From Vitrella brassicaformis CCMP3155 (taxonomy: Eukaryota; Protista; Chromerida), in assembly GCA_001179505.1 (NCBI GenBank), contig CDMY01000830.1:1-16481 (forward strand): 16,481 nt of DNA. The letters run 5' to 3'. This document shows positions 1 through 16,481 of the stretch, piece by piece. The position numbers and the translations under genes were made by a program. Each line of letters starts with the position of its first letter. Position 1 is the first letter of the stretch. The notes beneath the pieces were generated by a model, which was given only the letters and a program-made list of their open reading frames with translations, did no database searches and was not told the DNA's origin.

Positions 1-2831
1 TCTTGGGCAGCACGCGCGGCTTGAGCAGCCAGATCTGCTGCACGGGCAGACCCACCTTCATGCTCGCCGCACGGGCCACCTCCTGTGCGATCGTCCGCAG
101 CACCGCGTCCTTGTCGCCACGGTGGCGATCCGTCGTGCACGCCAGCATCGACACAAACCGACCAAACCCGCCAAAGTGCCGCCTGCTGGCCCTCTTGCTG
201 CTCTTGCCCGCCTTTGCCATGGTCAGCGCCCTGACCTCCTCCGGCCGCAGCTCACATGCGATGCCCATGCCCTCTCCCTGCTCGCTCTCCACGGGGAAGG
301 CCGCGCAGCAGCCGGGTCGCACGACGTCACACTTGGCCTCGATGGCCTCCTCGATGTCCTGAGGGATGTACTTGCGCCCCCTGACGATGATCATGTCCTT
401 GGCGCGGCCGGCGATGAAGAGCTCGCCCTTGTAGAGGAAGCCCGTGTCGCCGGTCCGCAGGAAGGGCCCTTCCTGCTTGGGTGCCTTGGTGGTGCACGAG
501 AGGCTGGCCTGGAACGTCTGGCGTGTCTGCTCCGCCATGTCGAAGTAGCCCTTGGTCGTAGAGGGAGACGACAGCCACACCTCACCCACATGGCCCTCGG
601 GCAGCAGGTGGTGGGTGGACGAATCCACTATCGCAACTGATGGATGGATGGATGGATGGAGGAAAAAAGAGAGCACATGAGGGCAGGGCAACTCGGTGGG
701 TTTGTGTGTGTGTGTGTGTCGGCATACCGGTTGTGTCGGTGGCAGGGAGTCTGCAGCCGATGACGATCTTTCGCTCGGACATGTCTGGCCAGCTGGGGCG
801 GAATCCATACCACTCCTCCTCAATGCGCACGTTGCCCTGATCGACACAAGCACATGTATACACGGTAAGTAAATGCAAATCAGACGCGCACACGTGTCCG
901 TCCGTCGATGCGTGCATTGCATCCTACGTTGGTCTCTAGCTCTAGGGCGTTGATCGAGAGCACCAGCGGCTCTGCGTCGAGGGTTGGCCGGAAGCCGGTG
1001 ACACACAGGGTGTTCTCGGCCAACCCAAAGGCAGGCAAGAAGGCGCTGGGGCGCACGCCAACCTCCCGAAACGTCTGCACACACACACACACATACATAG
1101 ACATACATGACACATACATGAGATAGTTAGTGGCCATCCATCGGTGGGAAAAGTCACTTAAGTCGGCTCACTCACATCCATGAAGTTCTTGATGGACGAG
1201 TATCTGATTGGCTCTGCTCCGCACAGCCAGGACGTCTTGCTGAGGTCGAGGGACTTCCTAATGTCCTCAGGCGTCTTGCGGCTGACCAGGTCGTAGGCGA
1301 AGTTGGGTGCGGCTGTGACCTCGCACTCCCACTTGGATAGGCCCTGCAGCCACGACCAGGGCCGCCGCACGAAATCTAGCGGGGACATCATGATCATCTC
1401 GCTGCCGAAGAACAACGTGCCACCAACAAGACCAATCAGACCTGATGATAAGAAAGGGGAGAGGGAGAGAGAGGGAGAGGGAGAGGGAGAGGGAGAGACG
1501 CATGGATGAATTGTCGGTTGTGTGTGCTTCAGTTCGTCCATCGTCTCACTGCATCCATATATGCCTACCCAGGTCATGATAGACCGGCAGCCAGCTGAAC
1601 GTGCGTACGTTGTGCCCCAGCACACTCCGCGATTGACTGTGCCTGTTGTACCAAAATGTCACGAACTCGCGCAACGGGCGATCAAACAGCGGGACGAAGG
1701 CCTCCTCGCTGCCGTCGGCCTCCCCTCCGCTGTCCTTCCTGAGGTCGTCCTTGGTGCGGCGATCGTCTCGCGGGTCCATCCCGAAGGTGGCCGTGCACAG
1801 GTGCACGTTGCTAAAAAAAAGTCCACAAGGACATAGACAGTGCACAGTGAATGCATCGCATCCGTCACTCACGCATCCATCGTGTGCCCTGCACAGCCTC
1901 TTTCTTACTGGAGTAGGTTTCCGTGTGTGACCATGACGCCCTTGGGGTGGTTGGTGGACCCCGAGGTGAACTGCAGGAAGGCCACCTGGCTGTGGGGTAT
2001 GTCGGAGGGGAGGGGGGGGAGGGACGGGCCGTGGCCGTTCTTGGAGGCCCTGTCGATGAGCTCCTGCGAGCTGAACCACCGCAGCTTGTGCCATTCCTTG
2101 CGCACCTCGTCGGTCAGCTCGTTCTCCTTTGCAGCCGGCGGCTGCGTGTGGCCGTTGGATGCGAGGGGTGCCTGGAGATGGGTGGCGATGGCCGAGGGGC
2201 GGTGGCTGTGGAGGGTGAGCTTGCAGTTGAGGCCGTGAAGGATGCGCTGGTAGAAGATGTTGGTCAGGCACACCTGCGCCTTGACCGTCGAAGCGATCCG
2301 CGTGAAACGGGGAAGGTCCGTGCTCAACTGAAACAACGAACAGTGACAGACAGACAGAGAGGCATGAACATACGAACGTGCGGGCACCGCACCCGAGTGG
2401 TCGTATGTATGTGTCCCTCCCGTCCCGTGGTGGTTGCCTAGACTGACCTTGGATGGGTCAGGAGGGTAGACAGGCACGGCGAGCACCCCACTGTACAGGC
2501 ACGCGAAGAAGGCCACGACAAAGTCGATGCCCGGCGGGTAGCACAGCAGCACCGACGCAGGCTTGCCATCCTCCCCCGCATCCAGCATTTGCAGCAGCTG
2601 CCGCCCCAGTGCCTCGGCCCGCCGATGCAGCTCCTGATAGCTGATGGCCGACTCCACGGATCCGTCCACCTTGATGAAGCGGACGGCATTGACGGCCGGC
2701 TGCACACGGGCCCAGTAGGAGATCATCCGCCGGATTGCGGGACCGTCCTCGGGCACTTCCGTCGGCGCGCCGTCACCACATGGCCACCAGCACTCCTTGA
2801 CGTAGTAGTCATATAGGCCGTTTGCCGCCAT
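1..2831 (-). CDS. Spliced fatty acyl-AMP ligase (FAAL-type adenylation enzyme), FAAL-1. Its C-terminal part runs off the window edge; it may be the loading domain of a second PKS.
   Basis: Hand-spliced exons (minus): 2831-2448, 2327-1909, 1810-1569, 1441-1176, 1074-928, 836-728, 636-<1. All introns are GT-AG with consistent phases. Motifs: [30 protein letters not shown]-loop LQFTSGSTNHPKGVMVTHGNL, SWLPVYHDLGLIG, APNFAY, CGAEPI, AFGLAENTL, GEVWLSSPS..KGY, FLRTGDTGF, GRAKDMIIVRGRKYIPQDIE, ending IWLLKPRVLPK at base 1. The WLPxxHDxGL motif and PNFAY point to the FAAL/FadD-like family rather than an NRPS A domain. Confidence 0.9.
637..727 (-). repeat. FAAL-1 intron with (AC)n near the donor and (TCCA)n at the acceptor
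   Basis: Plus strand shows (GATG)n at ~639-659 and (GT)n at ~704-719. Confidence 0.85.
1456..1498. repeat. Purine-rich (GAGAGG)n hexamer tract in FAAL-1 intron 3 (pyrimidine tract on the transcribed strand)
   Basis: ggggagagggagagagagggagagggagagggagagggagag seen directly. Confidence 0.9.
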
Positions 2832-2858
2832 GGGCAGCAAAGCAGATGCACAATCAGT

Positions 2859-3168: not shown

Positions 3169-3675
3169 ATCTCTGCCGCAACGCGTGGATCGGTGATCTT
3201 CAAGATGAATGCACTCGTGGGTGCCGTCTTTCCCTCCTCGTGGCTACTGGTGAGCACCGCACACACACACAAGCACACTCACATGTGAGTGCTGCATATT
3301 CGTGGGTTGATCTGCCTGTCTGTTTGTGATTTGTGTCATGGTGATCTCAGGTCTGAGTGCATCTGCGGCAGCAGCGTGACACATCAGCCTTCGTCCCCCC
3401 CACCCCCTTAATTCAGCGGCAGCAGTGGCCTGTCCAACGCAGTGGTGCAGAGGTGTTCTGACCTGTCCCTGGCTAAGCACGGGGCCAGACCCTCTTGATG
3501 GCCACCGCCGGCGAGGGGAACCTCGGCGCACCGCACCCACCGCCAGAGAACACACAACACACATGCATGCATGCTCGTGGCTGTGTGTGTGTATGTGTGT
3601 GTGTGTGTGCAGATAGTGTCCAAGGAGTGGAAGAAGAGTGAAGAGGACTTCCGCACCGGCGAGACCCCCTGGTGA
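3169..3675 (+). CDS. Candidate small spliced plus-strand gene of unknown function; exon chain unresolved
   Basis: Strong donors CTG|GTGAGT (3096) and CTG|GTGAGC (3250); acceptors CTCAG (3350) and (GT)n-GCAG (3612). The segment 3613-3675 has GC3-rich codons reading IVSKEWKKSEEDFRTGETPW*, and 3169-3249 reads ISAATRGSVIFKMNALVGAVFPSSWLL. I could not join these in one consistent frame. Confidence 0.3.
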
Positions 3676-4252
3676 TCATAGACGCGCCTTTCATTCCCAT
3701 GAATGCACACATACATACATAGATGGCTGCGTACAGTTTCACATGGGCGGAGAGAGCTTGAGAGAGATCGATGGTAGGCAGGCCGGTCGTCGTGTGTCTG
3801 TTTGTACAGGGGGTGGAGGGGCGATGGATGGATGGAACGCTATGCGTGAGCAGCTTTCTGCTGGCTGCAGTGAAGTGAATGTATGTGCGTGGGTGAGAGA
3901 CAGAGAGGGGAGGGGGGGGTGTGTGTAAGTGTGTGTCTGACGGCCAGCCTGCCTGCTCGACTAACGCTCGTGCCATGATGTGCTTGCTGCGTTGCAACCG
4001 ACCTTAGCGGCCATACGTGAGTGAGCATTTTTGTGGCGCGGTGCGGCAGAGGAGGAGGATCCATCACAAGCCCAGCAGATGACACCAGCGGCCAGGTAGG
4101 CACATGGATGGAGTCAGTTTGAGTGCTAACCACGGTGGACGACAGACACATCCATCGATGGCGCACACACCGCCAAAGTCCGAGAAACATGGCACGCACA
4201 CACAAATCCTGCCTGCCACGTCAACGACACGCCCACCCCACCCACCCACCCA

Positions 4253-5601
4253 CTATCCATCCATCCGTCCATTCGTGTGGTGTGGTGTGGTGGCTGTGAG
4301 GGTGCTGTGAGGGTGGATGGGAGGCCACCACCATGGGCGAGATGCGACGACGGGGGCGATCTTTTGAAGAAGCGCATCGAAATGGGACCGAGGAGGATGC
4401 GTCTCCTCCTTCTTGGCCTCCTCAAAGCGCCGCTCCTCCTCCCTCTCGCGCTTCCTCTTCTCCTTCTTCCTCTCTTCCCTCTCGCCCTTGGCAGTGCTGT
4501 CGGCGAGAGATGGGGCCACTCCTCGCTGTGTCTGGATGAAGCCGACTTGCTCGAGCCACTCCCGAGATGGAGGAACAACACGAGGAACAACACTCTGACA
4601 CATCCAGAAATGCAATCTCTGCCTCTGGCTGCGTGTCTCCCTCTTGCTCTAAGTGTGTGTATCTGTGTGTCATCCCACCTGTTTTGTGGTGGGCTGGTGG
4701 GCTGGCTGATTGTGGTCAGCGCAAAATCTTTTTGCGGTGGCCAGCGCGGCGAGCATGACGGGCTGAGGGGACTCACCAGACGCCTTCATGGTCTCCTGCC
4801 GCTTCAGCTGCCTGGTGAGGTGACCCTTCTTCGTGTGCTGCCCATATGCCACACACCAACACACACACGCTGAGAGAGAGGTCTGGGCGTGTGGTATTCT
4901 CACCCCGGAGGATCTTCATGGCCACATCCGGTCCGTGACGATCTATGGTCTGCGCACACTCTCACAACGGCTGCATACACACACACACACACACACACAC
5001 ACAGCCCCCCCCCCCCCCCCCCCCCCNNNNNNNNNNNNNNNNNNNNNNNNNNNNNNNNNNNNNNNNNNNNNNNNNNNNNNNNNNNNNNNNNNNNNNNNNN
5101 NNNNNNNNNNNNNNNNNNNNNNNNNNNNNNNNNNNNNNNNNNNNNNNNNNNNNNNNNNNNNNNNNNNNNNNNNNNNNNNNNNNNNNNNNNNNNNNNNNNN
5201 NNNNNNNNNNNNNNNNNNNNNNNNNNNNNNNNNNNNNNNNNNNNNNNNNNNNNNNNNNNNNNNNNNNNNNNNNNNNNNNNNNNNNNNNNNNNNNNNNNNN
5301 NNNNNNNNNNNNNNNNNNNNNNNNNNCCCCCCCCCCACCCCCCCCCCCCCCCCCCCCCTCTCTCTCTCTCTCTCCCTCTCCCTGTGTGTGTGTGTGTGTG
5401 TGCGTGTGTGTGATCTCACCTGGACCCTGATATCATCAGCAGCCGGCCTATCGACCTCCTTGGCCATCTCGTCCCACTCGTCAGGGTCCCACTGGTCCTC
5501 TGGAGCGATCTGCATTGGTCAGTGACAAGGTGTGCACGTGTGTGGGGACGGTGGGCCGAGCATCTCACCTCGCCCGCGGCCACACCCAGCTCCAATATCA
5601 T
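4253..5601 (-). CDS. Candidate spliced gene encoding a hypothetical protein with an acidic N-part and a Lys/Glu/Arg-rich coiled-coil-like C-part; one intron spans the assembly gap
   Basis: Exon candidates: 5601-5569 (MILELGVAAGE; could start further upstream), 5509-5420 (IAPEDQWDPDEWDEMAKEVDRPAADDIRVQ, with CTGAC branch-like site, CAG acceptor and GTGAGA donor), ~4949-4904 (TIDRHGPDVAMKILR), 4837-4777 (HTKKGHLTRQLKRQETMKAS), 4701-4679, 4594-~4253 (..REWLEQVGF..GEREERKKEKRKREREEERRFEEAKKEE..). One phase conflict remains at 4904/4837. No family recognised. Confidence 0.45.
4977..5412. repeat. Compound microsatellite block (AC)n - poly-C - [gap] - poly-C - (CT)n - (TG)n
   Basis: (AC)n 4977-5003, C-run 5005-5026, C-run 5327-~5357, (CT)n to ~5382, (TG)n 5383-5412. 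Confidence 0.95.
5027..5326. other. Assembly gap (300 N), flanked by poly-C on both sides
   Basis: Run of N seen directly. Confidence 1.
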
Positions 5602-6054: not shown

Positions 6055-9000
6055 ATGGAGTCGGCGTCACCCAAGGATCAGCGTGACGGTTCGCGCATCT
6101 CGAGTGGTCACGATGGTGCGGCAGCTGAGGCGCCGGGAGGGGGGGTGGGGAGCGGGGAGAAATGGGCCCTTCTGTCCAACCAGGGCGAAGGAGATGCCCG
6201 GGGGTCCGCTACTGACCAAGAAGGTGCCGGCGGATCCAGCTCTATCGGCAGCATGCGCCTCAGCCACGACTTCAACGACACCATCGCCCTCTACAACCAC
6301 TACCGCACTTGCGACCTCACATTTGAGGACATGGGCCTCGTGGCATCGAGTGCTAGCACGTCTGCCGCCGCCTTGGCGCCATCGCAGCCGCCCACTCCAC
6401 CACATGTGGTGCAGAGCAGGGTGGAGACCAAGACCGTCACCCACACCCACGGGCACGTGCTGTATCGGATTCTGGCCACGTGGGCGAGGTATCAGCCTGA
6501 CGAGATAGCTGTGACCATGCTCAACGCGGAGGGAGGCGTCCAGTCGCAGCTGTCGTATGGCGACCTCCACCGACAGGCCGCCCTGGTGGCGTCGCAGCTG
6601 ACCAAGCATCACGCTGCGACGGGCAAGGGCATCGGTGTGCAGAAGGGTGACCGAGTGATGCTGTGTTACCCATCGGGCATCGACTTCGTGGTGGCCTTCG
6701 TCGGCTGCCTCTATGCAGGTGAGTCAATCAATCAATGAGTGAATGAGTGAGTGAATGAATGAATGAATGTGTGTGTGACGGTTTGCTTGTGTTTGGTGTA
6801 TGCAGGTGTCGTTGCCGTCCCAGTGTGTCCTCCAGGTGAGGCAGATTGACAGACAGACAGACAGACAGACAATCCAATCAATCGGCCGTGCTCACCAGAT
6901 GCGAGCGTCATTCATTCATTCATTCATTCATCCACCTTTGCGTTGGTCTGTGTGTGTCAGATGCGTCAAAGTTTGAGAGCGACCTTCCTCGCTTCATGAG
7001 GATCATGCAGGAGACGGGCAGCAAGGCGGTCCTCACTAACGGGGCCTATCATCGTGTGGTGCAGTCCATCAATCTCAAGCTCAAGTTCAGCCGCGTCATC
7101 CACAAGCCCTCGTCCACCAAACGGACGAGCAGCAGCCGCAGCGCCAGCCTGCCCCCCGCCAGCGACAAGGGGCGTCAGGCGGCTGCCCCCTCGGCTGCTG
7201 ACCGCCAGGAGGAGTACAGTCGGGACTGGAAGGCCGTGCGGTGGATCGACACCAACGAGATGATCAAGAAGAGGCGCAAGACCCTGGCGGTCCAGACAGA
7301 CTCGTCCAGCTCAGCAGGGAGGGAAGGCGCCAGCGAGGAAGAAGACGACATCTCGCCGTCGGCGGTGCCCTTCAAGCCCCCATTCCTGGAGGCGAGGAGT
7401 CTGGCGGTGCTGCAGTTCACATCGGGCACGATGACGAGCCATCCACGGGGCGTGCAGGTCTCCCACGGCAACCTGCTGCACAACATTCATCTCATCGTCA
7501 AGAAGTTCGGCTTCGATTCGAGATTCGACCACTATAGCGTCCGGAAGCCCCCCACACCGGCGCACGGCACGTCCCTCTCGTCCATATCTGTCGCCCTCGG
7601 CAACAGTGCGGGTGGGGGCAGCTCCCGTAGCGACACATCCAGGGGGCTGTCGGCCTCCAGCTACGATTTGGACAAGATGATGGAGTTCTGGGTTTTGCGT
7701 CACCGTCTGTCGCGTGAGGTCCTGGGCCACAACGTCAGGACATTCACCTGGGTTCCCCTCTTCCATGACATGGGTACGCACAACACGCCACAATACGCCA
7801 CGGCAAAGCAAACCGATATACCGATGTATTTGTGTATGCGTATGTGTGTGCGGTGTCAGGGTTAGTCGGTTCGTTGTGTGGATCGATCTTCTTCGGTTCG
7901 GAGTTGGTCATGATGGCTCCGCACGACTTCCACCGCAAGCCGTCGCTGTGGCTGGAGGCCATGTCGAGGTATAACTGTGTGGCCACGGCCGGCCCCAACT
8001 TCGCATACGGCCTCGTCACCAAGAAGATCACCGACGAGACGCTAGAGAAGATTGACCTCAGCAAGGTGTGCGCCTTCCTCTGCGGATCCGAACCCGTCGG
8101 CCACAACACCATTCGCAAGTTCATCGTGGTACGCTCGCTGACAAGACAGCAACGATTGCTTGTCATCCAGACATTCATTGACCATGCCTCTGTGCTGTGT
8201 GTGGGCATCTATTGTTGGCAGAAACTTGAGAGTCGAGGTGTTCGTCCGAGCAGCTTCATGCCTGGATACGTACTGGTGAGCGACGTGCAGAAAAGCGATA
8301 CTGACGGCATGCGGCACTGTCACTCGTCGTTGTTTGTGTGTTTGTTAGGCTGAGAACACCCTGTGTGTGACGTGTCGCAACGACGTGGAGACCGAGCCGC
8401 TCGTCATTGCTGTTGATATGGACGGCATTCAATCAGATGTAAGTCAGGTGCAAATTGACACACCTGATCAAACGATCGTTCTTCGATGGTTCTGCTGTTG
8501 TGTGTGCGTGTGCGTTGTGCTTGTCAGGCGATCGCTGTAGTTCAGGATGAGTGGCGCGGATTCCCCGAGGACTGCAAGAACTACAAGGAGGATGAGACAT
8601 CCATCAAGCTGCTCATCGGATGCGGCACACCAACACTGGGGACATCAGGTACACACAACAGCCGATACACAAACATGACAGCTTTCCCGCTGTTCTTCTT
8701 TCTTGTCCCCTTCCGCCTTTCAGTTGTGATAGTTGATTCGACGACCCGTCAGGCGCTCCCAGAGTGTCACGTGGGCGACATCTGGGTACGGTCGGGCAGC
8801 ACGACACTCGGCTACCACGGAGATCCACAGCTGACCGATGACGTGTTCAACGGCCGGTACAGCAGGGGCAAGACGTCAGATGCCTCTATCGCCCAGAGAG
8901 GATTCCTCAAGACAGGAGACAAGGGATTCATCTACCAAGGAGGTACGCAAACGCCGCATCGTACACCTTGTTCGCAGCCATCGCCCACGTGTTGCTTCTC

Positions 9001-12000
9001 CCCTGGTCGATCCTCAGAGTTGTTTGTGACTGGTCGCACCCGTGACATGATCGTGGTCCGCGACCGTCGCTTCTTCCCCCAGGATCTGGAGGAGGAGATC
9101 GAGAAAAGCTGCGTCATCGTCAAGCCGGGAGGTGTGGTGTGCTTCGCCATGGGCGAGGAAGGAAGCGATGCCGTCGGCGTGGCGGCAGAGCTGCAGATCG
9201 ATTGCCTCAAGCAGCTGGGCGTCCGCGACTCGACCGGTCGGTCCGGCCGGAAGAACAACCCACTCAGCTGGTTCCGATGCAACGCTAGCGACATGAGCCA
9301 AGCGGACGAGTCGTTCTTCAAGAGTGTCTCCGACGACATATGGAGGGCCGTCGAGACCAAGGTCGGCCCGGCAGTGCATAAGGTGTGGCTGTTGAAGCCA
9401 CAAAGCCTCCCCAAGACGACTTCTGGCAAGCTGCACCGCTCGAGAGCCAGCCAGGAGCTGTCAGATGGAACGCTGGACGGCGTGCTTCTATCCGTGGAGG
9501 GCAAGCCTGTCCCTGTGGAGCGCCCATCCATCAAGCAGGACACGGGCGTCATCGACTACCTGAGGAGCCTACAGAGCGGAGACAACCGCAGCGAGGTCAG
9601 TTCCGCCCCCTCGTCGCCGCGCGTGGGCGACCGCCCTTCCCCATCCCTCTTGTGTGAGCGGTTCGCCATCGGCACCCAATCGCAGCGATCGCTCTCTGTT
9701 GCCACCAGCTCGGCAGGCGACATGTCGCCCACCCATGTCGGGGCTGAAGGCAGCACGCTACTGGATTCCGCAAGTGAGGCGCTCGTCACGTCGGACGATG
9801 GCCATGACTCACCATCCGGCGAGGGCGCTGATGTGGTGGCGCCCGTCACAGCGCCCCCAATGGACGACAACGTCCGCAACAAGGTGCCTCGCGAGCTCAC
9901 TCAGCTGGACGTATCGCTGATTCACGGACGTGTCCAAGCAGTGGTCTTGGAGACCGTCGTGGAAGCCGTGAGTGGCTCGGCCATCGACCCCAGCAGTGTG
10001 ACGCTCGACACGCCCCTTCCAGAGCTCGGGATCGACTCCCTCATGGCTGTCGAGATCCGCGACACTATCTCGCAGAAGGTGGGTGTGGAGATTCCCTCGA
10101 CCACCCTGTTCGACTACCCCAGTCTACACGAGGTGGTCGATTTCATCACCAAAGAGATCGTGAACCTCCGTGACAACATCGCGTCTGAGAGTGCTGAGGC
10201 GTCCCGGAGCGAGCCTGCCAGTCTCCCCAGTCCCGTCACCACGGTTACGGCGAATGCGGTGGTGATTGTGGGAGCCGCATGTCGTCTTCCTGGCCATTCG
10301 ACGTCCCCCCTGGCGTACTGGTCGATGGTCATGCAGCACACAGATTGCGTGATGGACGTGCCGCTCACTCGATGGAACATGGCCGACTACTACGATCCAG
10401 ACCCCGACTCCGTTTGGTCGGCATACGTGACGCAGGGGGCCTTCATGGAGCACACGGACCTTTTCGACAACGGCTTCTTCGGCATCAGCCCTGTGGAGGT
10501 GCCAACCATGGATCCCCAGCAGCGGATGATGCTTGAGGTCGGATATGAGGCCCTTCACTCTGCTGGCATGCCCAAAGAGAAGCTCACCGGCAGGGACTAC
10601 GGTGTCTTCATCGGATGCTGCAACAACGATTGGCAGTTTGTCAATCCATCGCAGAAGGGCAGCAGCTACTCGGGCACGGGAGGCGCAACCAGCATCGTCG
10701 CCAATCGTGTCAGCTACTGCTTTGGACTCAGGTGGGCTGTAAGACCAAGTCGATATGTCAAAGTGATCACACGTGAACTTCACGGACCCTGTCTATGTAA
10801 CTTTCGCTTTCAGGGGTCCAAGTCTGTCATGTGACACGGCCTGTTCATCGTCACTCGTCGCAATGGACACCGCAATGAAGCACATGCGAGCAGGTGAGTC
10901 ACTGCTTCTTCGTTCGCCCCACCTTCGCTTTCATTTCTGTTCGCATCTCCGTATCCATAGGCATGACTGGTGCACTGGTTGGAGGCGTCAACCTCATGCT
11001 GGCGCCGAATCTGTTCATCGCCTTCTGCAAGGCTCGGATGCTTGCTGCCGATCACAAGTGCAAGACGTTCGATGCCAAGGCCAACGGCTACGTGAGGGGC
11101 GAAGGTGTGGTGGCCCTCTACCTGCGACAAGCGGCAGAGGCGCAGGCTGACCACATGGAGCCGCTGGCGATCGTCAGGGGGACTGCGATCAACCACGTGG
11201 GCAAGAGCGTCAGTCTCACAGCCCCTTACGCCCCTGCCCAAGCCGACTGCATCCGCAGTGCGCTCGCACAAGCCGGTGTGTCGCCGGCTGACGTGACGTA
11301 CATGGAGGCTCATGGGACGGGCACACTGCTCGGGGACCCCATCGAGATGACGGGCCTCAAGTCGGTGTTTGGGAGCCACCGGACTGAGGAGAACCCGCTC
11401 ATCATCGGCGCTGTCAAGACCAACATTGGTCATTCGGAGGGACCGTCGGGCATCTCTGGTCTGATCAAGTGCATGCTGACGCTGATTCACGGCATCGCCC
11501 CTCCCAACATTCACATGACCTCCCTCAATCCGCACATCGATGTGGAGTCATTCCCAGTCATCTTCCCCGTCGAGCCCGTCGACCTGAAGTCGCGTGCCCA
11601 TGGGACCCACTTCATCGGCGGCGTGAGCTCGTTCGGCTTCGGAGGGGCCAACGGGCACGTGGTGATTGAGGCCAGCACCACCTCGCTGCCGGCTCTCGAG
11701 AAGAACGAGTCACAGATGCCGACATGGAACCACAAGTCTTACCCCTGGAGCAACATCCGTCACCCCATCCTCGACACCAAGAAGATCTGGGACATCGATA
11801 AGGATTGGAAGGTCGACGTACCGATGAGAGACGATGTCAAGGAGTTCTTTCTCGACCACATCGTGGCCAACACGCCCCTGATGCCCGGCGCGGGCTACAT
11901 CGAGCTGATGGCTGCCGTGGGGTCGCATGCAAGCAGCAGTGCCGCAGTCAGCACGGAGATCTGCCCGAGGAAGGTCGTCACCATCGAGAACCTTGCCTTC

Positions 12001-15000
12001 GAGCAGCCCATGGTGTTGAGCGCCGAGCAGGCCATCGAGATCGTGACGCGGAAGGATACAAAGGGCTTCACTGAAATCTGCAGCAGGCCGCCAGGAGCGC
12101 ACGGTGACGAGGCAAGACATGCTGTCGGGACCATCACGTCAGTGACCGACCTGAAACCGATAGCAGAAACCACGCTCGAGACGCTCCAGGCTGGCTGCAC
12201 CACTGAGGTGCCGACGAGGCTCTTCTACGAGGAGCTGAGCAAGTCTGGCCTCGGGTATGCCACACGCTTCCAGACCGTCAAAGAACTCTACATGGGCGAT
12301 GGAGAGGTGATGGCCAAGCTTTCTGCCAACTCACCAGCGACCTTCGAGGCGGGCTTCCGGGTCCATCCTGCAATCCTCGACGGCGCATTCCAGGCGACGG
12401 CCGTCCTCCTCCATTCCAACCCAGAGGCCTTCACCGTACGATCACGCACCCCTGGACGACCACGCACCCCTCGCACCCCTCGCACCCCTCGCACCCCTCG
12501 GGCAGCCACCGGCTCGAAGCCATCGTCACCGCTCGTCCCCGTGGGCGTCTCGCGAGCGGTCATCAGGACCCTCAGCAGCAAGGAGTACTGGGCTCACGTT
12601 CGCCTGTTGGAGAAGGGAGCCAACGATGCCAAGGCTGCAGTGACGCTGTACCAGGTGGTCAGCGTGTCCGGGCAGAGGGTCAACCTGCGGCCAGTCACAA
12701 CCATTGAGGAGCTATCTCTTCGCAAGATCGACTTGTCTGCGCGCATCGAGATCCCTCGCGAGCTGCTGTGGCAGCTGGATTGGCGGGAGCGCGCAGAGCC
12801 GTCCGCCGAGGACCAGCCAGCAGCCGACGCCGATGCATCCATCCTCGTCATCAGCCACGATCAGTCGTTTGCCGAGGAAGTGAGCACGTCGCTTAAGCGC
12901 CAGACGTCCGTCCTCAGCGGGCTGCCGAGCGCCGAGGCCATCGGCGAGAGTCTGGACAAGAGCGAGTGCAGCACCGTGCTGTACGTGGCGGCTCTGGAGG
13001 AGGCGAGCGATCCCGTGGACGTGCTTGACGGCTTCCTGCAGCTATGCAAGGCCATGTCTGCCCGCAAGGGCGGCTCGCTGCCCTTCGTGTGGGCGCCTGT
13101 GCTGTCGGTTGAGGGCCATGATGGGGTGCCGCCGCGGCACTCGGGCCTGTGGGGCTTCGCCAAGAGCGCTCGGCTTGAAATGGAGATGGAGATGAGCCGC
13201 CGAGTGACGATCGGCTGCATCGAGGTGGCTCAGCAGTCGACGGCCGAGTGGTGCGATGCCGTCAAGCTGGTGATGGAGAGGCAGGCAGAGGCGCCATACG
13301 AGCCTGAAGTGTCCGTCAGAGGAAAGCAGCTGATGATTCCGCGGCTCGCCAAGGCCGCGCTGCCGGTGAGGGGGGCGATTGAGCTCCACATGGCCGAGCG
13401 GGGGGCGATATCCAACCTACGACTGAGGCCCCAGAAGCAGCCGGACAACGTGCAGCTGCCCGAGGGGTGCGTGATCGTCCGTGTGCGTGCGGTTGGATTG
13501 AATTTCCGTGACGTGTTGAACGTGATGGGTTTGTATCCTGGCGACCCGGGTCCGCCTGGCGGCGATTGCTCGGGGACGGTCGTGAGTGTTGGAGCCGGTG
13601 TGACGCATCTGAGTGTGGGCGATGATGTGTACGGTGTTGCGCCAGGGTGTCTGCGGACGTATGTGGCCACGGATGCCCACTTGATGGCCATCAAGCCGGT
13701 GACCATGTCGTTCGAGCAAGCCGCGGCGCTGCCAGTCGTCTTCGTCACCGTCGAAGTCGCCTTCAGGGAGCTCGCCAAGGTCCACAAGGGNNNNNNNNNN
13801 NNNNNNNNNNNNNNNNNNNNNNNNNNNNNNNNNNNNNNNNNNNNNNNNNNNNNNNNNNNNNNNNNNNNNNNNNNNNNNNNNNNNNNNNNNNNNNNNNNNN
13901 NNNNNNNNNNNNNNNNNNNNNNNNNNNNNNNNNNNNNNNNNNNNNNNNNNNNNNNNNNNNNNNNNNNNNNNNNNNNNNNNNNNNNNNNNNNNNNNNNNNN
14001 NNNNNNNNNNNNNNNNNNNNNNNNNNNNNNNNNNNNNNNNNNNNNNNNNNNNNNNNNNNNNNNNNNNNNNNNNNNNNNNNNNNNNNNNNNTTGCTTTACT
14101 CATTTGTCTCTTTGCTTGTCTGTTTGCTTGTGTATTTGTCGTGTACGTGTCACTCAATCACTCAATCAATCAATCAATGCGTTCAGGTGATGGGTGCGTG
14201 GCATCTGCACGAGCACTGCGTCCGTGAGTGTGTTGACCTGGATCACTTCGTCATGTTCTCGTCGGTGGCGTCGATGCTGGGCAACTTCGGCCAGAGCAAC
14301 TACGCTGCGGCGAATGCGTGCCTCGACGCGCTGTCGGTGTACCGGCGGTCGAGTGGGCTGAGTGGCCAGTCGATCCAGTGGGGCCCGTGGCTCGAGCAGG
14401 GCATGGCGGCCCACATGACGCAGCAGTACCTGGACAAGGTCGGCATGCGAGGGCTGTCCAACGAGCTGGGCCTGCGGGTGCTCGGCGACGTCATGAGGTC
14501 AACCACTGCTGTAAGCTCAAGTGGTTGTCCGGCTGTGGTGGGCTGCCAGTCGCTGCAGTGGGGCAGCTTCCTGCAACGCTACGAGGTGGAGCCCTTGCCG
14601 TCGTTCCTTTCGGACGTCATCCCCGCAGACAGGGGACTGGGAGGCGGTGCAGGCCCCGACAGCGAGGTCACTCAGGCCCTGCTGCAGATGGACGACGATG
14701 CCCTCAAGGAATACGTCTACAAGACTGTCCTCGAGACGGCACAGGAAGTCTTCGGCGGCAGCGAGGACAACATCCCGCCCCTCGACGCCCCGCTGCAGGA
14801 GTGGGGCATCGACTCGCTCGGAGCGGTCGAGTTCAGGAACGCCCTCGCGGCACGACTGGGCGTCAAGCTGCCCGCCACCACTCTCTTCGACTACCCCACC
14901 CTCAGAGGCATCATTGGTTTCATCGTCTCGGAGATCCAGGGCAAGTCGGCAAGCAAGACCGGCAAGCAGCACAAAGGCAAAGCAGCAGAGGCAGCAACCA

Positions 15001-16481
15001 GGACCCTCGCCTCTGGAGCCCACCCGCGCAGCGGCGCCCTGTCTGTTCAGTCACTGGCTACCACAGACAGCGACCGGCTGGCGGTGGTGGGTCTGTCGTG
15101 CCGGCTGCCCGGCGGGTCCAACGGTGTGTCGCGGTTCTGGGAGATGCTCATGAACGAGACGCACTGCATTGAGGAGATCCCTCTGACGCGCTGGAACGTG
15201 GACGAGTGGTACGACGCGGACCCTGATGCCCGGAGCAAGATCTACACGCGCGAGGCGGCCTTCATCGACAATGCCGAGTACTTTGACAACGGGTTCTTCA
15301 ATATTTCCCCTGCAGAGGTAACGGTCATGGACCCGCAGCAGCGGCTGATGCTCGAGGTCGGCTACGAGGCCTTCCACAGCGCGGGCATGGGTCGCGAGGA
15401 GCTCCTCGGACAGAACATGGGCGTCTTCATCGGGTGCTGCAACCAAGACTGGAACTTCGTCAACATCACCGAGAAGAGCAGCAGCTACTCGGGCACGGGA
15501 GGCGCAACCAGCATCGTCGCCAATCGTGTCAGCTACATCTTCGGCCTCAAGGGCCCCAGCATGACACTCGACACGGCCTGCTCCTCGTCACTCGTCGCCC
15601 TCGACTCGGCCGTCAAGAACACCCAGCTCGGCGTCTGCCAGGACGGCGCCCTCGTGGGAGGCGTCAACCTCATGCTCTCTCCCTTCGCCTTCGTCGCCTT
15701 CTCAAAGGCCCGCATGCTCGCCCCCGACTGCAAGTGCAAGACGTTCGACGCCAAGGCCAACGGCTACGTCAGGGGCGAAGGCGCCGGAGCAGTGGTGCTG
15801 CGCCGAGCGAGCGACCTTGGCAACCGCAGCCAACAAGCGCTGGCGACCATTGTCGGGTGTGCCGTCAACCACGATGGGCGGAGCGCCAGTCTGACGGCTC
15901 CCAATGGCCCTGCGCAGCAAGAGGTGCTTCGATCGACCTTGGCTCAGGCCAGCCTGTCGCCCTCTGACGTGTCGTACATCGAGACGCACGGCACGGGCAC
16001 CGCTCTGGGCGATCCCATCGAGCTGGGCGCGCTCAAGAGTGTGTTCGGTACTGAAGGGGCGGAGGGGGAGGACGCGACGATCCGGATGGCTCATCCGCTG
16101 GTGCTGGGCGCTCTCAAGACCAACATCGGGCACCTGGAGGGATCGGCAGGCATCTCGGGGCTCATCAAGCTCATCCTCACTCTCCTGCACGGTGTCGCGC
16201 CGCCCAACCTGCACTTCCATCAGCTCAACCCCCACATCGACATGGACGGATTCAACGTCGTCCTGCCGACGCAGCCCGTCAAGCTTCTCAGGAACAAGAG
16301 CAGCCAGCAGCAAGAGCAAGACGAGGCCATGCCGGTCCTGGTGGGCGGCGTCAGTTCCTTCGGCTTCGGCGGCGCCAACGCCCACGCCCTCATCCAGTGC
16401 CACCCCATCAGCCAGTCGTCGACAACAACGGTGCAGGAGCTGCTCGAGACGGGAGGTTTGTCAGCGGCGGCCCGGCAGTCT
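6055..16481 (+). CDS. Modular type I polyketide synthase / FAS-like megasynthase, 3'-partial: FAAL-ACP-KS-DH-psiKR-ER-[gap]-KR-ACP-KS..., with an AT-less module 1
   Basis: Hand-spliced exons: 6055-6718, 6806-6835, 6961-7773, 7860-8128, 8222-8275, 8349-8438, 8528-8648, 8724-8942, 9018-10731, 10814-10893, 10961->13790 (gap), 14187->16481. All visible introns are GT-AG and phase-consistent. The ATG at 6055 follows an in-frame upstream TGA at 6007. Domain motifs are listed in the entries below. Continuity across the gap is inferred from ER-then-KR domain order. Confidence 0.92.
6451..9480 (+). other. FAAL loading domain of the PKS (FAAL-2), with degenerate ATP-binding motifs
   Basis: [73 protein letters not shown](V)[47 protein letters not shown] (Lys codon 9428-9430). 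Confidence 0.88.
6719..6960 (+). repeat. Tetranucleotide microsatellites in PKS introns 1-2: (CAAT)n, (GAAT)n, (GACA)n, (CATT)n
   Basis: Seen directly around the 30-nt exon 6806-6835. Confidence 0.9.
9932..10160 (+). other. ACP domain 1 (loading ACP)
   Basis: [16 protein letters not shown]...[12 protein letters not shown]; phosphopantetheine Ser codon 10037-10039. Confidence 0.92.
10256..11670 (+). other. Ketosynthase domain KS1 (contains two introns)
   Basis: [28 protein letters not shown] (Cys 10842-10844 on the 80-nt exon 10814-10893), [30 protein letters not shown]; catalytic triad intact. Confidence 0.95.
11761..12735 (+). other. Dehydratase domain
   Basis: HPILD start, [17 protein letters not shown] (His 11857-11859), [11 protein letters not shown] (Asp 12379-12381). 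Confidence 0.9.
12445..12498 (+). repeat. Coding 9-bp tandem repeat (CGCACCCCT) encoding Arg-Thr-Pro units inside the DH domain
   Basis: One copy at 12445-12453, a GGACGACCA spacer, then four perfect copies at 12463-12498; translates [18 protein letters not shown]. Confidence 0.95.
12760..13350 (+). other. Structural (non-catalytic) KR subdomain (psiKR)
   Basis: LWQLDWRE...ILVISHD...VLYVAAL...[11 protein letters not shown]...[12 protein letters not shown], in the usual position between DH and ER. Confidence 0.75.
13375..13790 (+). other. Enoylreductase domain, N-terminal half (truncated by the gap)
   Basis: [56 protein letters not shown]. The NADPH-binding GGVG region is not visible. Confidence 0.9.
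13791..14090. other. Assembly gap (300 N) inside the PKS, hiding the ER C-half and KR N-half
   Basis: Run of N seen directly; it starts in coding sequence and ends inside an intron (14091-14186 with (CAAT)n and a TTCAG acceptor). Confidence 1.
14187..14620 (+). other. Ketoreductase catalytic subdomain, C-terminal half
   Basis: VMGAWHLHE...[32 protein letters not shown]...SIQWGPW; catalytic Tyr 14301-14303. No A-type Trp, so B-type is likely; the LDD motif lies in the gap. Confidence 0.9.
14710..14940 (+). other. ACP domain 2
   Basis: [38 protein letters not shown]; Ser codon 14814-14816. Confidence 0.93.
15075..16400 (+). other. Ketosynthase domain KS2 (intronless)
   Basis: [28 protein letters not shown] (Cys 15579-15581), [43 protein letters not shown]. 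Confidence 0.95.

What the first reader, a model, noticed from the sequence alone, without database searches (positions are those of the whole stretch)
11671..11760. AT-less (trans-AT) fully reducing module with no AT-docking remnant
Seen: only 30 codons ([30 protein letters not shown]) separate the KS1 end (GHVVIE) from the DH start (HPILD). There is no AT and no KS-AT linker domain; only a post-AT-linker-like [10 protein letters not shown] remains. Established: a cis-AT with linkers needs about 400 aa. Apicomplexan FAS1-type enzymes are largely cis-AT, while AT-less modules typify bacterial trans-AT systems and some algal giant PKSs. Inference: this enzyme needs a separate malonyl transferase, an AT from another module, or self-malonylating ACPs. 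No AT gene is visible in the window. After KS2 the sequence (..[10 protein letters not shown]) could be the start of a KS-AT linker, which would make it a cis/trans hybrid.
Basis: partly seen in the sequence, partly recalled or inferred. Interest (0 to 1): 0.7.

Follow-up and report, generated by a model that had tools for sequence, protein, structure and literature searches.

The report
AT-less module in Vitrella megasynthase
The first chain-extending module of this giant fatty-acid/polyketide synthase gene of the alga Vitrella brassicaformis really has no acyltransferase of its own, but such modules are frequent in this genome and already described for chromerid algae, so it is a clean example of a known design.

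Summary
Observation confirmed. Exactly 30 codons (11671-11760) separate the end of KS1 from the start of the DH, inside one uninterrupted exon (10961-13790). Pfam finds no acyltransferase (AT) anywhere in the window.

The junction is not an assembly collapse. Contigs from two further studies bridge it with zero differences.

The genome matches Vitrella brassicaformis CCMP3155 exactly (72,700,666 bp, 1064 scaffolds). It holds at least 11 direct KS-to-DH junctions, all with the same pre-DH motif (P-x-W-x-H-x-x-F/Y-P-W ... HP). In cis-AT paralogs that motif sits just after the AT, so the AT was excised cleanly.

"No docking remnant" is true. It is also expected, because cis-AT modules of this genome lack the ~85-residue KS-AT linker domain as well.

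KS2's tail is 100% identical over its last 154 nt to contig C900, which runs straight into an intact malonyl-type AT. The enzyme is therefore probably a mixed cis-AT/AT-less line.

Apart from plastid-type FabD and one MaoC-AT fusion I did not examine further, I found no free-standing AT.

The likeliest donor of malonyl to ACP1 is an AT elsewhere in the megasynthase, most probably in module 2. This is inferred, not shown.

The scan had already reported the same design on other contigs of this genome. Tomcala 2020 and Shelest 2015 describe it. Low novelty.

The parts
6475..9505 (+). FAAL-type AMP-binding (adenylation) loading domain, spread over several exons
   Evidence: PF00501 pieces at about 6475-6720, 7266-7508 and 7808-8125. 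The C-terminal part matches paralogous FAAL regions.
9983..10147 (+). ACP0 of the loading unit
   Evidence: PF00550, E 4.7e-14.
10253..10731 (+). KS1 exon A (N-terminal part)
   Evidence: PF00109, E 2.3e-39. The exon ends before GT at 10732.
10732..10813 (+). Intron 1 of KS1 (GT..AG, 82 nt)
   Evidence: Read from the DNA and from the frame change.
10814..10893 (+). KS1 exon B with the active-site Cys (DTACSSS)
10894..10960 (+). Intron 2 of KS1 (GTGAGT..AG, 67 nt)
10961..11670 (+). KS1 C-terminal part with both catalytic His (EAHGTGT at 11305-11325, NIGHSEG at 11422-11442), ending GHVVIE
   Evidence: PF00109 and PF02801; motif coordinates.
11671..11760 (+). 30-codon KS1-to-DH spacer, the finding; it holds neither an AT nor a KS-AT linker domain
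11719..11748 (+). Pre-DH motif [10 protein letters not shown], the retained end of the post-AT linker
   Evidence: The same motif precedes the DH in 10 AT-less paralogs and follows the AT in cis-AT paralogs. Bacterial AT-less KS-DH proteins have the equivalent PFxRxRYW.
11761..12732 (+). DH domain (catalytic His in [10 protein letters not shown] at 11857-11886; [10 protein letters not shown] at 12364-12393) with a Pro/Arg/Thr low-complexity insert at 12439-12531
   Evidence: PF21089 and PF14765; motifs; 9-nt tandem repeat at 12463-12500.
13465..13790 (+). ER domain, N-terminal (GroES-like) part, cut by the assembly gap
   Evidence: PF08240, E 5.3e-11. It is 95% identical to the ER of C900.
13791..14090 (.). 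Run of 300 N (assembly gap) that hides the ER Rossmann half and the KR N-half
   Evidence: By comparison with C900, about 1 kb of coding sequence is missing.
14184..14393 (+). KR domain, C-terminal part with the catalytic Tyr (SNYAAAN)
   Evidence: PF08659, E 1e-23; translation.
14724..14924 (+). ACP1, the carrier that must receive malonyl without a module-own AT (GIDSL serine present)
   Evidence: PF00550, E 2.9e-13; translation.
15073..16385 (+). KS2, intronless, complete
   Evidence: PF00109 E 5.2e-84 and PF02801 E 1.1e-38.
16386..16481 (+). 32-codon tail after KS2, up to the contig end; it equals the short KS-to-AT linker of contig C900
   Evidence: The last 154 nt are 100% identical to C900:383-536. 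In C900 the AT motif GQGSQ follows 10 residues later.

Best explanation
The window is a whole scaffold of Vitrella brassicaformis. It carries the 5' part of a FAAL-primed FAS-I/PKS-I-type megasynthase: FAAL-ACP0-[KS1-DH-ER-KR-ACP1]-[KS2-...]. Module 1 is a genuine AT-less, reducing elongation module. It arose when the AT was excised cleanly from a KS-AT-DH module, together with its short flanking linkers, leaving only the conserved pre-DH motif that ends the post-AT linker. KS1 keeps Cys-His-His and ACP1 keeps its serine, so the module should condense and therefore needs malonyl-ACP1. Inferred, not shown: malonyl is delivered by an AT elsewhere in the megasynthase system. The most probable donor is the intact malonyl-type AT that follows KS2 in the next module ('semi-trans' AT sharing). 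ACP1 must visit KS2 anyway to hand over its chain, and in this lineage the AT sits only about 35-40 residues from the KS. No docking subdomain is left behind because this alveolate lineage has no KS-AT linker domain even in its cis-AT modules. My odds: real AT-less module 0.95; donor is an AT of the same polypeptide 0.5-0.55.
For: Anatomy.

Not an artefact: contigs of three runs from three studies bridge 11671-11760 with no differences, and the frame is open across it.

Recurrent design: 11 KS-to-DH direct junctions and about 4 further AT-less KS, against about 24 KS-to-AT, in the same genome.

Clean excision: the pre-DH motif is shared by AT-less linkers and by the post-AT segments of cis-AT paralogs.

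Linker domain absent in the lineage:
- PF16197 stops at profile position 56 of 111 in both the AT-less junction and the cis-AT module of C900.
- In the alignment to CurL (4mz0), chain residues ~491-575 have no counterpart.
- In the solved trans-AT KS-DH 7zma, the KS end and the DH motif lie ~209 residues apart, against 56 here.
- Short KS-AT linkers were also noted for TgPKS2 (PMC9301873).

AT after KS2: the window's last 154 nt equal C900:383-536, which continues into an AT with GHSLGE and HAFH.

AT sharing: every better-assembled FAAL-primed array with AT-less modules keeps at least one cis AT (C685, C236, C791, C378, C731). I did not classify the context of every AT hit; among those I could place, the only ATs outside megasynthases were FabD (C525, three exons, ~82-residue N-extension) and a MaoC-AT fusion (C666).

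Repeated loss: in a KS N-terminal tree, AT-less and cis-AT KSs interleave, and well-supported branches force at least 4 changes.

Literature: PMC7464705, PMC4661987, PMC7073580.
Against: No biochemical or expression evidence. No RNA run held the stretch, and the contigs that bridge it contain the introns, so they are DNA.

The link from the window to C900 is inferred. C900's first 238 nt are only 91% identical to the window, and a 92%-identical copy of KS2 (C155) also overlaps C900. C900 may therefore belong to a sister gene, with the window's own continuation unassembled.

The genome is a draft searched exon by exon, so a small free-standing AT gene with many introns could be missed.

The ER and KR cores lie in an N gap.

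The KS tree rests on only 161 columns.
Confidence: 0.7

Rival explanations
1. A dedicated free-standing acyltransferase acts in trans, as in bacterial and chlorophyte trans-AT PKSs. It could be a dual-targeted FabD or an AT gene not yet recognised.
For: One true FabD exists on C525; its three exons sum to about 266 bits against the TIGR00128 cut-off of 260.9. Algal multimodular PKSs are generally assumed to use ATs in trans (PMC4661987).
Against: The first FabD exon carries an ~82-residue N-terminal extension, as expected for a plastid FAS-II enzyme. No other AT free of a megasynthase context was found, apart from a MaoC-AT fusion I did not examine further. Every well-assembled gene keeps a cis AT, which a dedicated trans-AT would make dispensable.
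Confidence: 0.2
2. An AT of a different megasynthase polypeptide supplies malonyl. Candidates are the head-to-head neighbour gene or one of the roughly 24 cis-AT modules elsewhere.
For: Many malonyl-type cis ATs are encoded in the genome. A second FAAL-primed gene lies divergently on the same scaffold.
Against: No evidence of interaction. The neighbour's AT content is unknown because it runs off the scaffold. An intramolecular AT is sterically the simpler solution.
Confidence: 0.12
3. ACP1 self-malonylates, or module 1 does not elongate at all (it is skipped or only processes the chain).
For: Nothing in the sequence excludes self-loading of ACP1.
Against: KS1 has the complete Cys-His-His set of a condensing KS and none of the His loss seen in non-elongating KS0 domains. 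Self-malonylation is not established for type I carrier domains (my own knowledge).
Confidence: 0.05
4. Assembly artefact: an AT-coding segment was collapsed out between 11670 and 11761.
For: The scaffold has two N gaps, and repeated modules are 92-100% identical to other contigs.
Against: Independent contigs from three runs bridge the junction without a difference. The reading frame is continuous. Ten paralogous junctions show the same architecture with diverged sequence.
Confidence: 0.02

Closest known systems
Chromerid FAS-I/PKS-I-like multimodular enzymes (Woo 2015, PMC4501334; Tomcala 2020, PMC7464705)
   Same: Same organism and gene family. [quoted passage not shown] The enzymes are FAAL-primed and mostly fully reducing.
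   Different: In the passages I read, these papers work at the level of domain lists. I did not find the 30-residue junction, the retained pre-DH motif, the lack of a linker domain in cis-AT modules or the repeated AT loss described there.
Apicomplexan CpFAS1/CpPKS1 and TgPKS2
   Same: AMP-ligase-ACP loading unit, modules of the KS-AT-DH-ER-KR-ACP type, a terminal reductase (seen on C900), and short KS-AT linkers (TgPKS2, PMC9301873).
   Different: Those enzymes are described as carrying an AT in each full module; here module 1 has none.
Algal trans-AT and 'semi-trans-AT' multimodular PKSs (Shelest 2015, PMC4661987; O'Neill 2020, PMC7073580)
   Same: Modules without an integrated AT; one AT presumed to serve several modules; evolution by module duplication and AT loss.
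   Different: Chlorophyte enzymes lack ATs altogether, and haptophyte enzymes have one N-terminal AT. Here cis-AT and AT-less modules alternate within a gene, and the KSs of the two kinds are interleaved in the tree.
Bacterial trans-AT PKS KS-DH modules (for example PDB 7ZMA, the best solved match; AT-less KS structures 4QYR and 4TKT)
   Same: KS followed by DH without an AT. 7zma is the best PDB match to the junction (E 3.5e-40).
   Different: The bacterial KS is followed by a flanking (docking) subdomain of about 100 residues, giving ~209 residues from the KS end to the DH motif against 56 here. Some bacterial metagenomic AT-less KS-DH proteins (P0016, P0078) do have similarly short linkers.

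Membership tests
AT-less type I PKS/FAS module (architecture class) | Condensing KS with Cys-His-His | tested here: met
   DTACSSS in exon B, EAHGTGT at 11305-11325 and NIGHSEG at 11422-11442.
AT-less type I PKS/FAS module (architecture class) | No AT domain between the KS and the next domain of the module | tested here: met
   No PF00698 in the window. The gap from KS to DH is 30 residues.
AT-less type I PKS/FAS module (architecture class) | Module-own ACP with a phosphopantetheine serine | tested here: met
   PF00550 at 14724-14924, with the GIDSL motif.
Trans-AT PKS in the strict (bacterial) sense | Free-standing AT protein encoded separately | tested here: not met
   Whole-genome scans with PF00698 and TIGR00128, followed by context checks. 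Only plastid-type FabD and a MaoC-AT fusion lie outside megasynthases. The genome is a draft, so this absence is not proof.
Trans-AT PKS in the strict (bacterial) sense | KS-flanking (AT-docking) subdomain after the KS | tested here: not met
   PF16197 matches only profile positions 3-56 of 111. The distance from the KS end to the DH motif is 56 residues, against ~209 in 7zma.
Trans-AT PKS in the strict (bacterial) sense | KS belongs to a separate trans-AT KS lineage | tested here: not met
   In the tree of this genome's KS N-terminal parts, AT-less and cis-AT KSs interleave. KS1's nearest rows by identity are cis-AT KSs (60%). No bacterial sequences were included in the tree.
Alveolate FAAL-primed FAS-I/PKS-I megasynthase (CpFAS1/CpPKS1/TgPKS type) | N-terminal AMP-ligase plus ACP loading unit | tested here: met
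   PF00501 exons and PF00550 upstream of KS1.
Alveolate FAAL-primed FAS-I/PKS-I megasynthase (CpFAS1/CpPKS1/TgPKS type) | Successive reducing modules KS-(AT)-DH-ER-KR-ACP | tested here: met
   The ER and KR cores are hidden in the N gap.
Alveolate FAAL-primed FAS-I/PKS-I megasynthase (CpFAS1/CpPKS1/TgPKS type) | C-terminal thioester reductase for chain release | tested here: inconclusive
   Not in the window, because the gene runs off the scaffold. The probable continuation or sister contig C900 ends ACP-NAD_binding_4.
'Semi-trans' AT sharing within one polypeptide | An AT in another module of the same chain that acylates the AT-less module's ACP | not testable with these tools
   The presence of an AT after KS2 is inferred from the 154-nt identity with C900. 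Malonyl transfer to ACP1 needs an assay.

The most novel reading that the evidence does not exclude
Chromerid and apicomplexan megasynthases may form a compact structural type with no KS-AT linker domain at all. In it the AT could be lost cleanly and repeatedly (at least 4 times in this one genome), because a neighbouring module's AT, sitting beside the KS that the upstream ACP must visit anyway, can load that ACP. If so, this family is a natural series of matched cis-AT and AT-deleted module pairs, useful for learning how to delete or share ATs in engineered synthases.
Probability: 0.4. Interest if true: 0.4.

Novelty: already known. Interest (0 to 1): 0.15.

Why it matters
The value is mainly that of a correct annotation. 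The gene is a mixed cis-AT/AT-less, FAAL-primed, reducing megasynthase that probably makes a long alkyl chain.

Two small additions come out of the work. First, the missing 'docking remnant' is explained by a lineage-wide absence of the KS-AT linker domain. Second, paralog pairs within one genome show where an AT can be cut out without disturbing the KS-DH connection.

Neither changes the current picture of algal or apicomplexan polyketide synthases.

Tried and rejected
- **Word-based protein search on the junction.** It returned mostly bacterial proteins matching only the KS, because of the length limits on candidates. It did not recover the organism's own annotated protein, and it says little about how the junction is distributed among alveolates. 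Two bacterial AT-less KS-DH proteins (P0016, P0078) were useful for the motif comparison.
- **RNA evidence.** No run on record as RNA held the stretch. The contigs laid are collinear with the introns, so they are DNA. Expression and splicing are therefore unconfirmed.
- **Joints reported by read laying** (for example 11653 to 11986). They have 20-29-nt sides and non-canonical ends. I take them for partial alignments of paralog contigs, not splicing.
- **Tandem AT-AT on C418 and C244 as candidate free-standing ATs.** Rejected. C244 reads FAAL-ACP-KS-AT-(KS tail-AT)-DH, and C418 is the same kind of unit cut by a scaffold end.
- **The big representative-protein search.** Not run. It is costly and the claim does not rest on an absence of relatives.
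- **Structure prediction.** Not run. The tool also returns no contact data that could test how the motif packs.
- **Complex prediction of AT with ACP1.** Not run, because a pass would not discriminate ACP1 from any other ACP.

Full report
**What is there**

The window is a complete scaffold (C830) of a genome of 72,700,666 bases in 1064 pieces. These figures are exactly those published for Vitrella brassicaformis CCMP3155 (PMC4501334).

On the + strand lies the 5' part of a megasynthase gene with introns:
- FAAL-type AMP-binding exons, about 6475-9505
- ACP0, 9983-10147
- KS1 in three exons, 10253-10731, 10814-10893 and 10961-11670, with GT-AG introns of 82 and 67 nt
- the 30-codon spacer, 11671-11760
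- DH, 11761 to about 12732
- the ER N-part, 13465-13790
- a run of 300 N
- the KR C-part, 14184-14393
- ACP1, 14724-14924
- KS2, 15073-16385
- a 32-codon tail to the scaffold end

This layout rests. All searches used single exons or open frames by reference.

**The observation**

It holds to the base. GHVVIE ends at 11670, HPILD starts at 11761, and the motif [10 protein letters not shown] lies at 11719-11748. No acyltransferase model matches anywhere in the window. The Pfam model of the KS C-terminal extension (PF16197) matches only its first half, positions 3-56 of 111, which are the last KS strands. The half that models the KS-AT linker domain is missing.

KS1 keeps Cys, His and His. The DH keeps its His and the [10 protein letters not shown] motif. 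The KR keeps its Tyr and ACP1 its Ser.

'Fully reducing' is likely but not fully visible. By comparison with the paralog on C900, the N gap hides about 1 kb that should encode the ER Rossmann half and the KR N-half.

**Is it an assembly artefact?**

Logan contigs of four runs were laid on 8400-13790. A 1657-bp contig of run X2 (11076-12732) and a 1590-bp contig of X3 (11143-12732) cross the junction with no difference from the window. These two runs come from different studies. A 1148-bp contig of X1, the probable source sample, does the same.

These contigs also contain the introns, so they are DNA. No RNA run was found, and expression remains untested.

A collapse is also unlikely on internal grounds. 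The frame is open from 10879 to the gap, and the same architecture recurs in diverged paralogs.

**How common it is in this genome**

A six-frame search with the junction protein found 11 places where a KS runs directly into a DH, the window's own included. The others lie on C685 (three), C236 (two), C378, C731, C430, C791 and C889. About four more KSs are followed by the linker motif but by another domain. Some 24 KSs are followed within about 100 nt by an AT. By my count, roughly 15 of 39 classifiable KSs are AT-less. Some of these contigs are near-duplicates of each other.

All AT-less linkers are 20-50 residues long and share P/x-W-x-H-x-x-F/Y-P-W followed by HP.

**Origin of the spacer**

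In cis-AT paralogs (C27, C900, C378, C731, C997) the AT is followed, after about 40-50 residues, by the same motif and then the DH. One example is HQWKH..FPW..HP.LG. The 30-residue spacer is therefore what remains when the AT and its flanks are removed. Bacterial AT-less KS-DH proteins from metagenomes carry the equivalent PFxRxRYW...HPLLG after a similarly short stretch.

**Why there is no docking remnant**

The cis-AT modules of this genome have no KS-AT linker domain either.
- In C900 only about 40 residues lie between the KS end motif (NAH) and GQGSQ. PF16197 again stops at profile position 56.
- In the alignment to CurL (PDB 4mz0), chain residues ~491-575, its linker domain, have no counterpart in C900.
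- In the solved bacterial trans-AT KS-DH 7zma, the KS end and the DH motif are ~209 residues apart. In the window they are 56 apart.
- D'Ambrosio et al. noted short KS-AT linkers in Toxoplasma TgPKS2 (PMC9301873).

Nothing was left behind because there was nothing to leave. This is a trait of the lineage, not a peculiarity of this module.

**What follows KS2**

The last 154 nt of the window are 100% identical to C900:383-536. This stretch includes all 32 codons after KS2. In C900 it continues after 10 residues into an AT with GQGSQ, GHSLGE and the malonyl-type HAFH motif, then DH-ER-KR-ACP and a reductase domain.

The link is not proven.
- C900's first 238 nt are only 91% identical to the window.
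- A 1.4-kb contig, C155, is 92% identical to window 14914-16376 and overlaps C900's start at 99%.
- C685's end is 92% identical to window 12701-13620.

The modules are mosaic repeats, which explains the scaffold ends and N gaps. C900 may belong to a sister gene. Even so, the identical tail is a KS-to-AT linker and lacks the pre-DH motif. I put the chance that KS2 is followed by an AT at about 85%.

**Who loads ACP1?**

Whole-genome scans with PF00698 and with the FabD model found 39 and 37 exon-level matches. I checked those not obviously attached to a KS.
- C525 is a true FabD in three exons, summing to about 266 bits. It has an ~82-residue N-terminal extension, as expected for the plastid FAS-II enzyme.
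- C666 is a MaoC-dehydratase-AT fusion.
- The tandem ATs of C244 and C418 sit inside a FAAL-ACP-KS-AT-(KS tail-AT)-DH array.
- C1 is an AT-...-ACP fragment.

I therefore found no convincing free-standing cytosolic AT.

Every better-assembled FAAL-primed array that has AT-less modules also keeps at least one cis AT: C685, C236, C791, C378 and C731. C685 has the window's own order, FAAL, then an AT-less module, then a cis-AT module.

From this I infer AT sharing within the polypeptide ('semi-trans', the term of PMC7073580 for haptophytes). ACP1 must dock at KS2 to pass on its chain, and the AT sits right beside that KS. This step is inference and no assay supports it.

**Evolution**

I built a maximum-likelihood tree of 36 KS N-terminal parts from this genome, using 161 columns. 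AT-less and cis-AT KSs interleave in it, and well-supported branches force at least four changes of state.

KS1 falls in a supported AT-less clade (97/94) with KSs of C731 and C378. One AT-less pair (C236 and C685) nests inside a clade that is otherwise cis-AT.

The tree is short, unrooted and contains long branches. I therefore claim only 'more than one loss'.

**Comparison with what is known**

- Tomcala et al. 2020 (PMC7464705) state that the chromerid FAS-I/PKS-like enzymes all contain at least one module lacking an AT. They cite Shelest et al. 2015 (PMC4661987), who describe AT-less modules as a hallmark of algal multimodular PKSs that evolved by AT displacement and module duplication.
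- O'Neill 2020 (PMC7073580) calls the chromerid enzymes cis-AT and almost fully reducing.
- Earlier reports of this scan reached the same reading on other contigs of this genome. I re-derived it here independently.

The module works like a trans-AT module but fails the membership tests of the bacterial trans-AT family. It has no free-standing AT, no docking subdomain and no separate KS lineage within this genome.

**Verdict**

The feature is real and correctly described. It is ordinary for this organism and already in the literature at the level of domain architecture.

Noticed in passing
window 2-427 (-) and 1905-2840 (-): A second FAAL-type AMP-binding gene lies on the minus strand and runs off the left end of the scaffold, head-to-head with the megasynthase gene (PF00501, E 1e-22, and a paralog match).
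   Followed up: partly
window 5027-5326 and 13791-14090: Two runs of exactly 300 N. The first sits in the intergenic region between CA/poly-Pro-coding simple repeats. The second sits inside ER/KR, at the same place as an N gap in the paralog C900, where modules are 95% identical.
   Followed up: partly
window 12439-12531: A Pro/Arg/Thr-rich low-complexity insert inside the DH, encoded by a perfect 9-nt tandem repeat (4.2 copies at 12463-12500).
   Followed up: no
L039 (C900:1-10000), about 6460-6740 and 7834-9703: The probable terminal module ends ACP-thioester reductase (NAD_binding_4). Open frames matching a sulfotransferase family (PF13469) follow on the same strand, which could mean a sulfated long-chain product or a fused tailoring enzyme.
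   Followed up: no
L039 (C900) 239-376, against window 16310-16319 and C155: C900 carries a Ser/Pro/Lys-rich insertion of about 46 residues in a KS surface loop. It is absent from the window's KS2 and from C155.
   Followed up: no
cis-AT modules on C27, C900, C378, C731, C997 (L003, L010, L011, L012, L007): Only about 30-40 residues separate the KS end from the AT motif GQGSQ, against about 125 in CurL. The KS-AT linker domain seems absent from the whole family.
   Followed up: partly
L083 (C244:76000-85999) and L043 (C418:74000-81364): A tandem duplication of [KS tail + AT] lies inside a FAAL-ACP-KS-AT-...-DH gene, giving two ATs in a row. It is either a real AT-AT didomain or an assembly duplication.
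   Followed up: partly
G000:C858:12674-14650 (-): Two AT matches lie in one 2861-residue open frame, directly one after the other (KS-AT-AT?).
   Followed up: no
L040 (C666:36000-44000) 3346-4779 (+): An open frame combines a MaoC-like dehydratase with a partial AT match. It recalls fungal-type FAS arrangements and has no evident link to the megasynthases.
   Followed up: no
runs X7, X9, X10, X12 (marine sediment metagenomes): Marine sediment metagenomes from two studies hold 26-65% of the sampled words of 11300-12300. Their contigs match at 99% or more, so Vitrella or a very close relative is present in those sediments.
   Followed up: no
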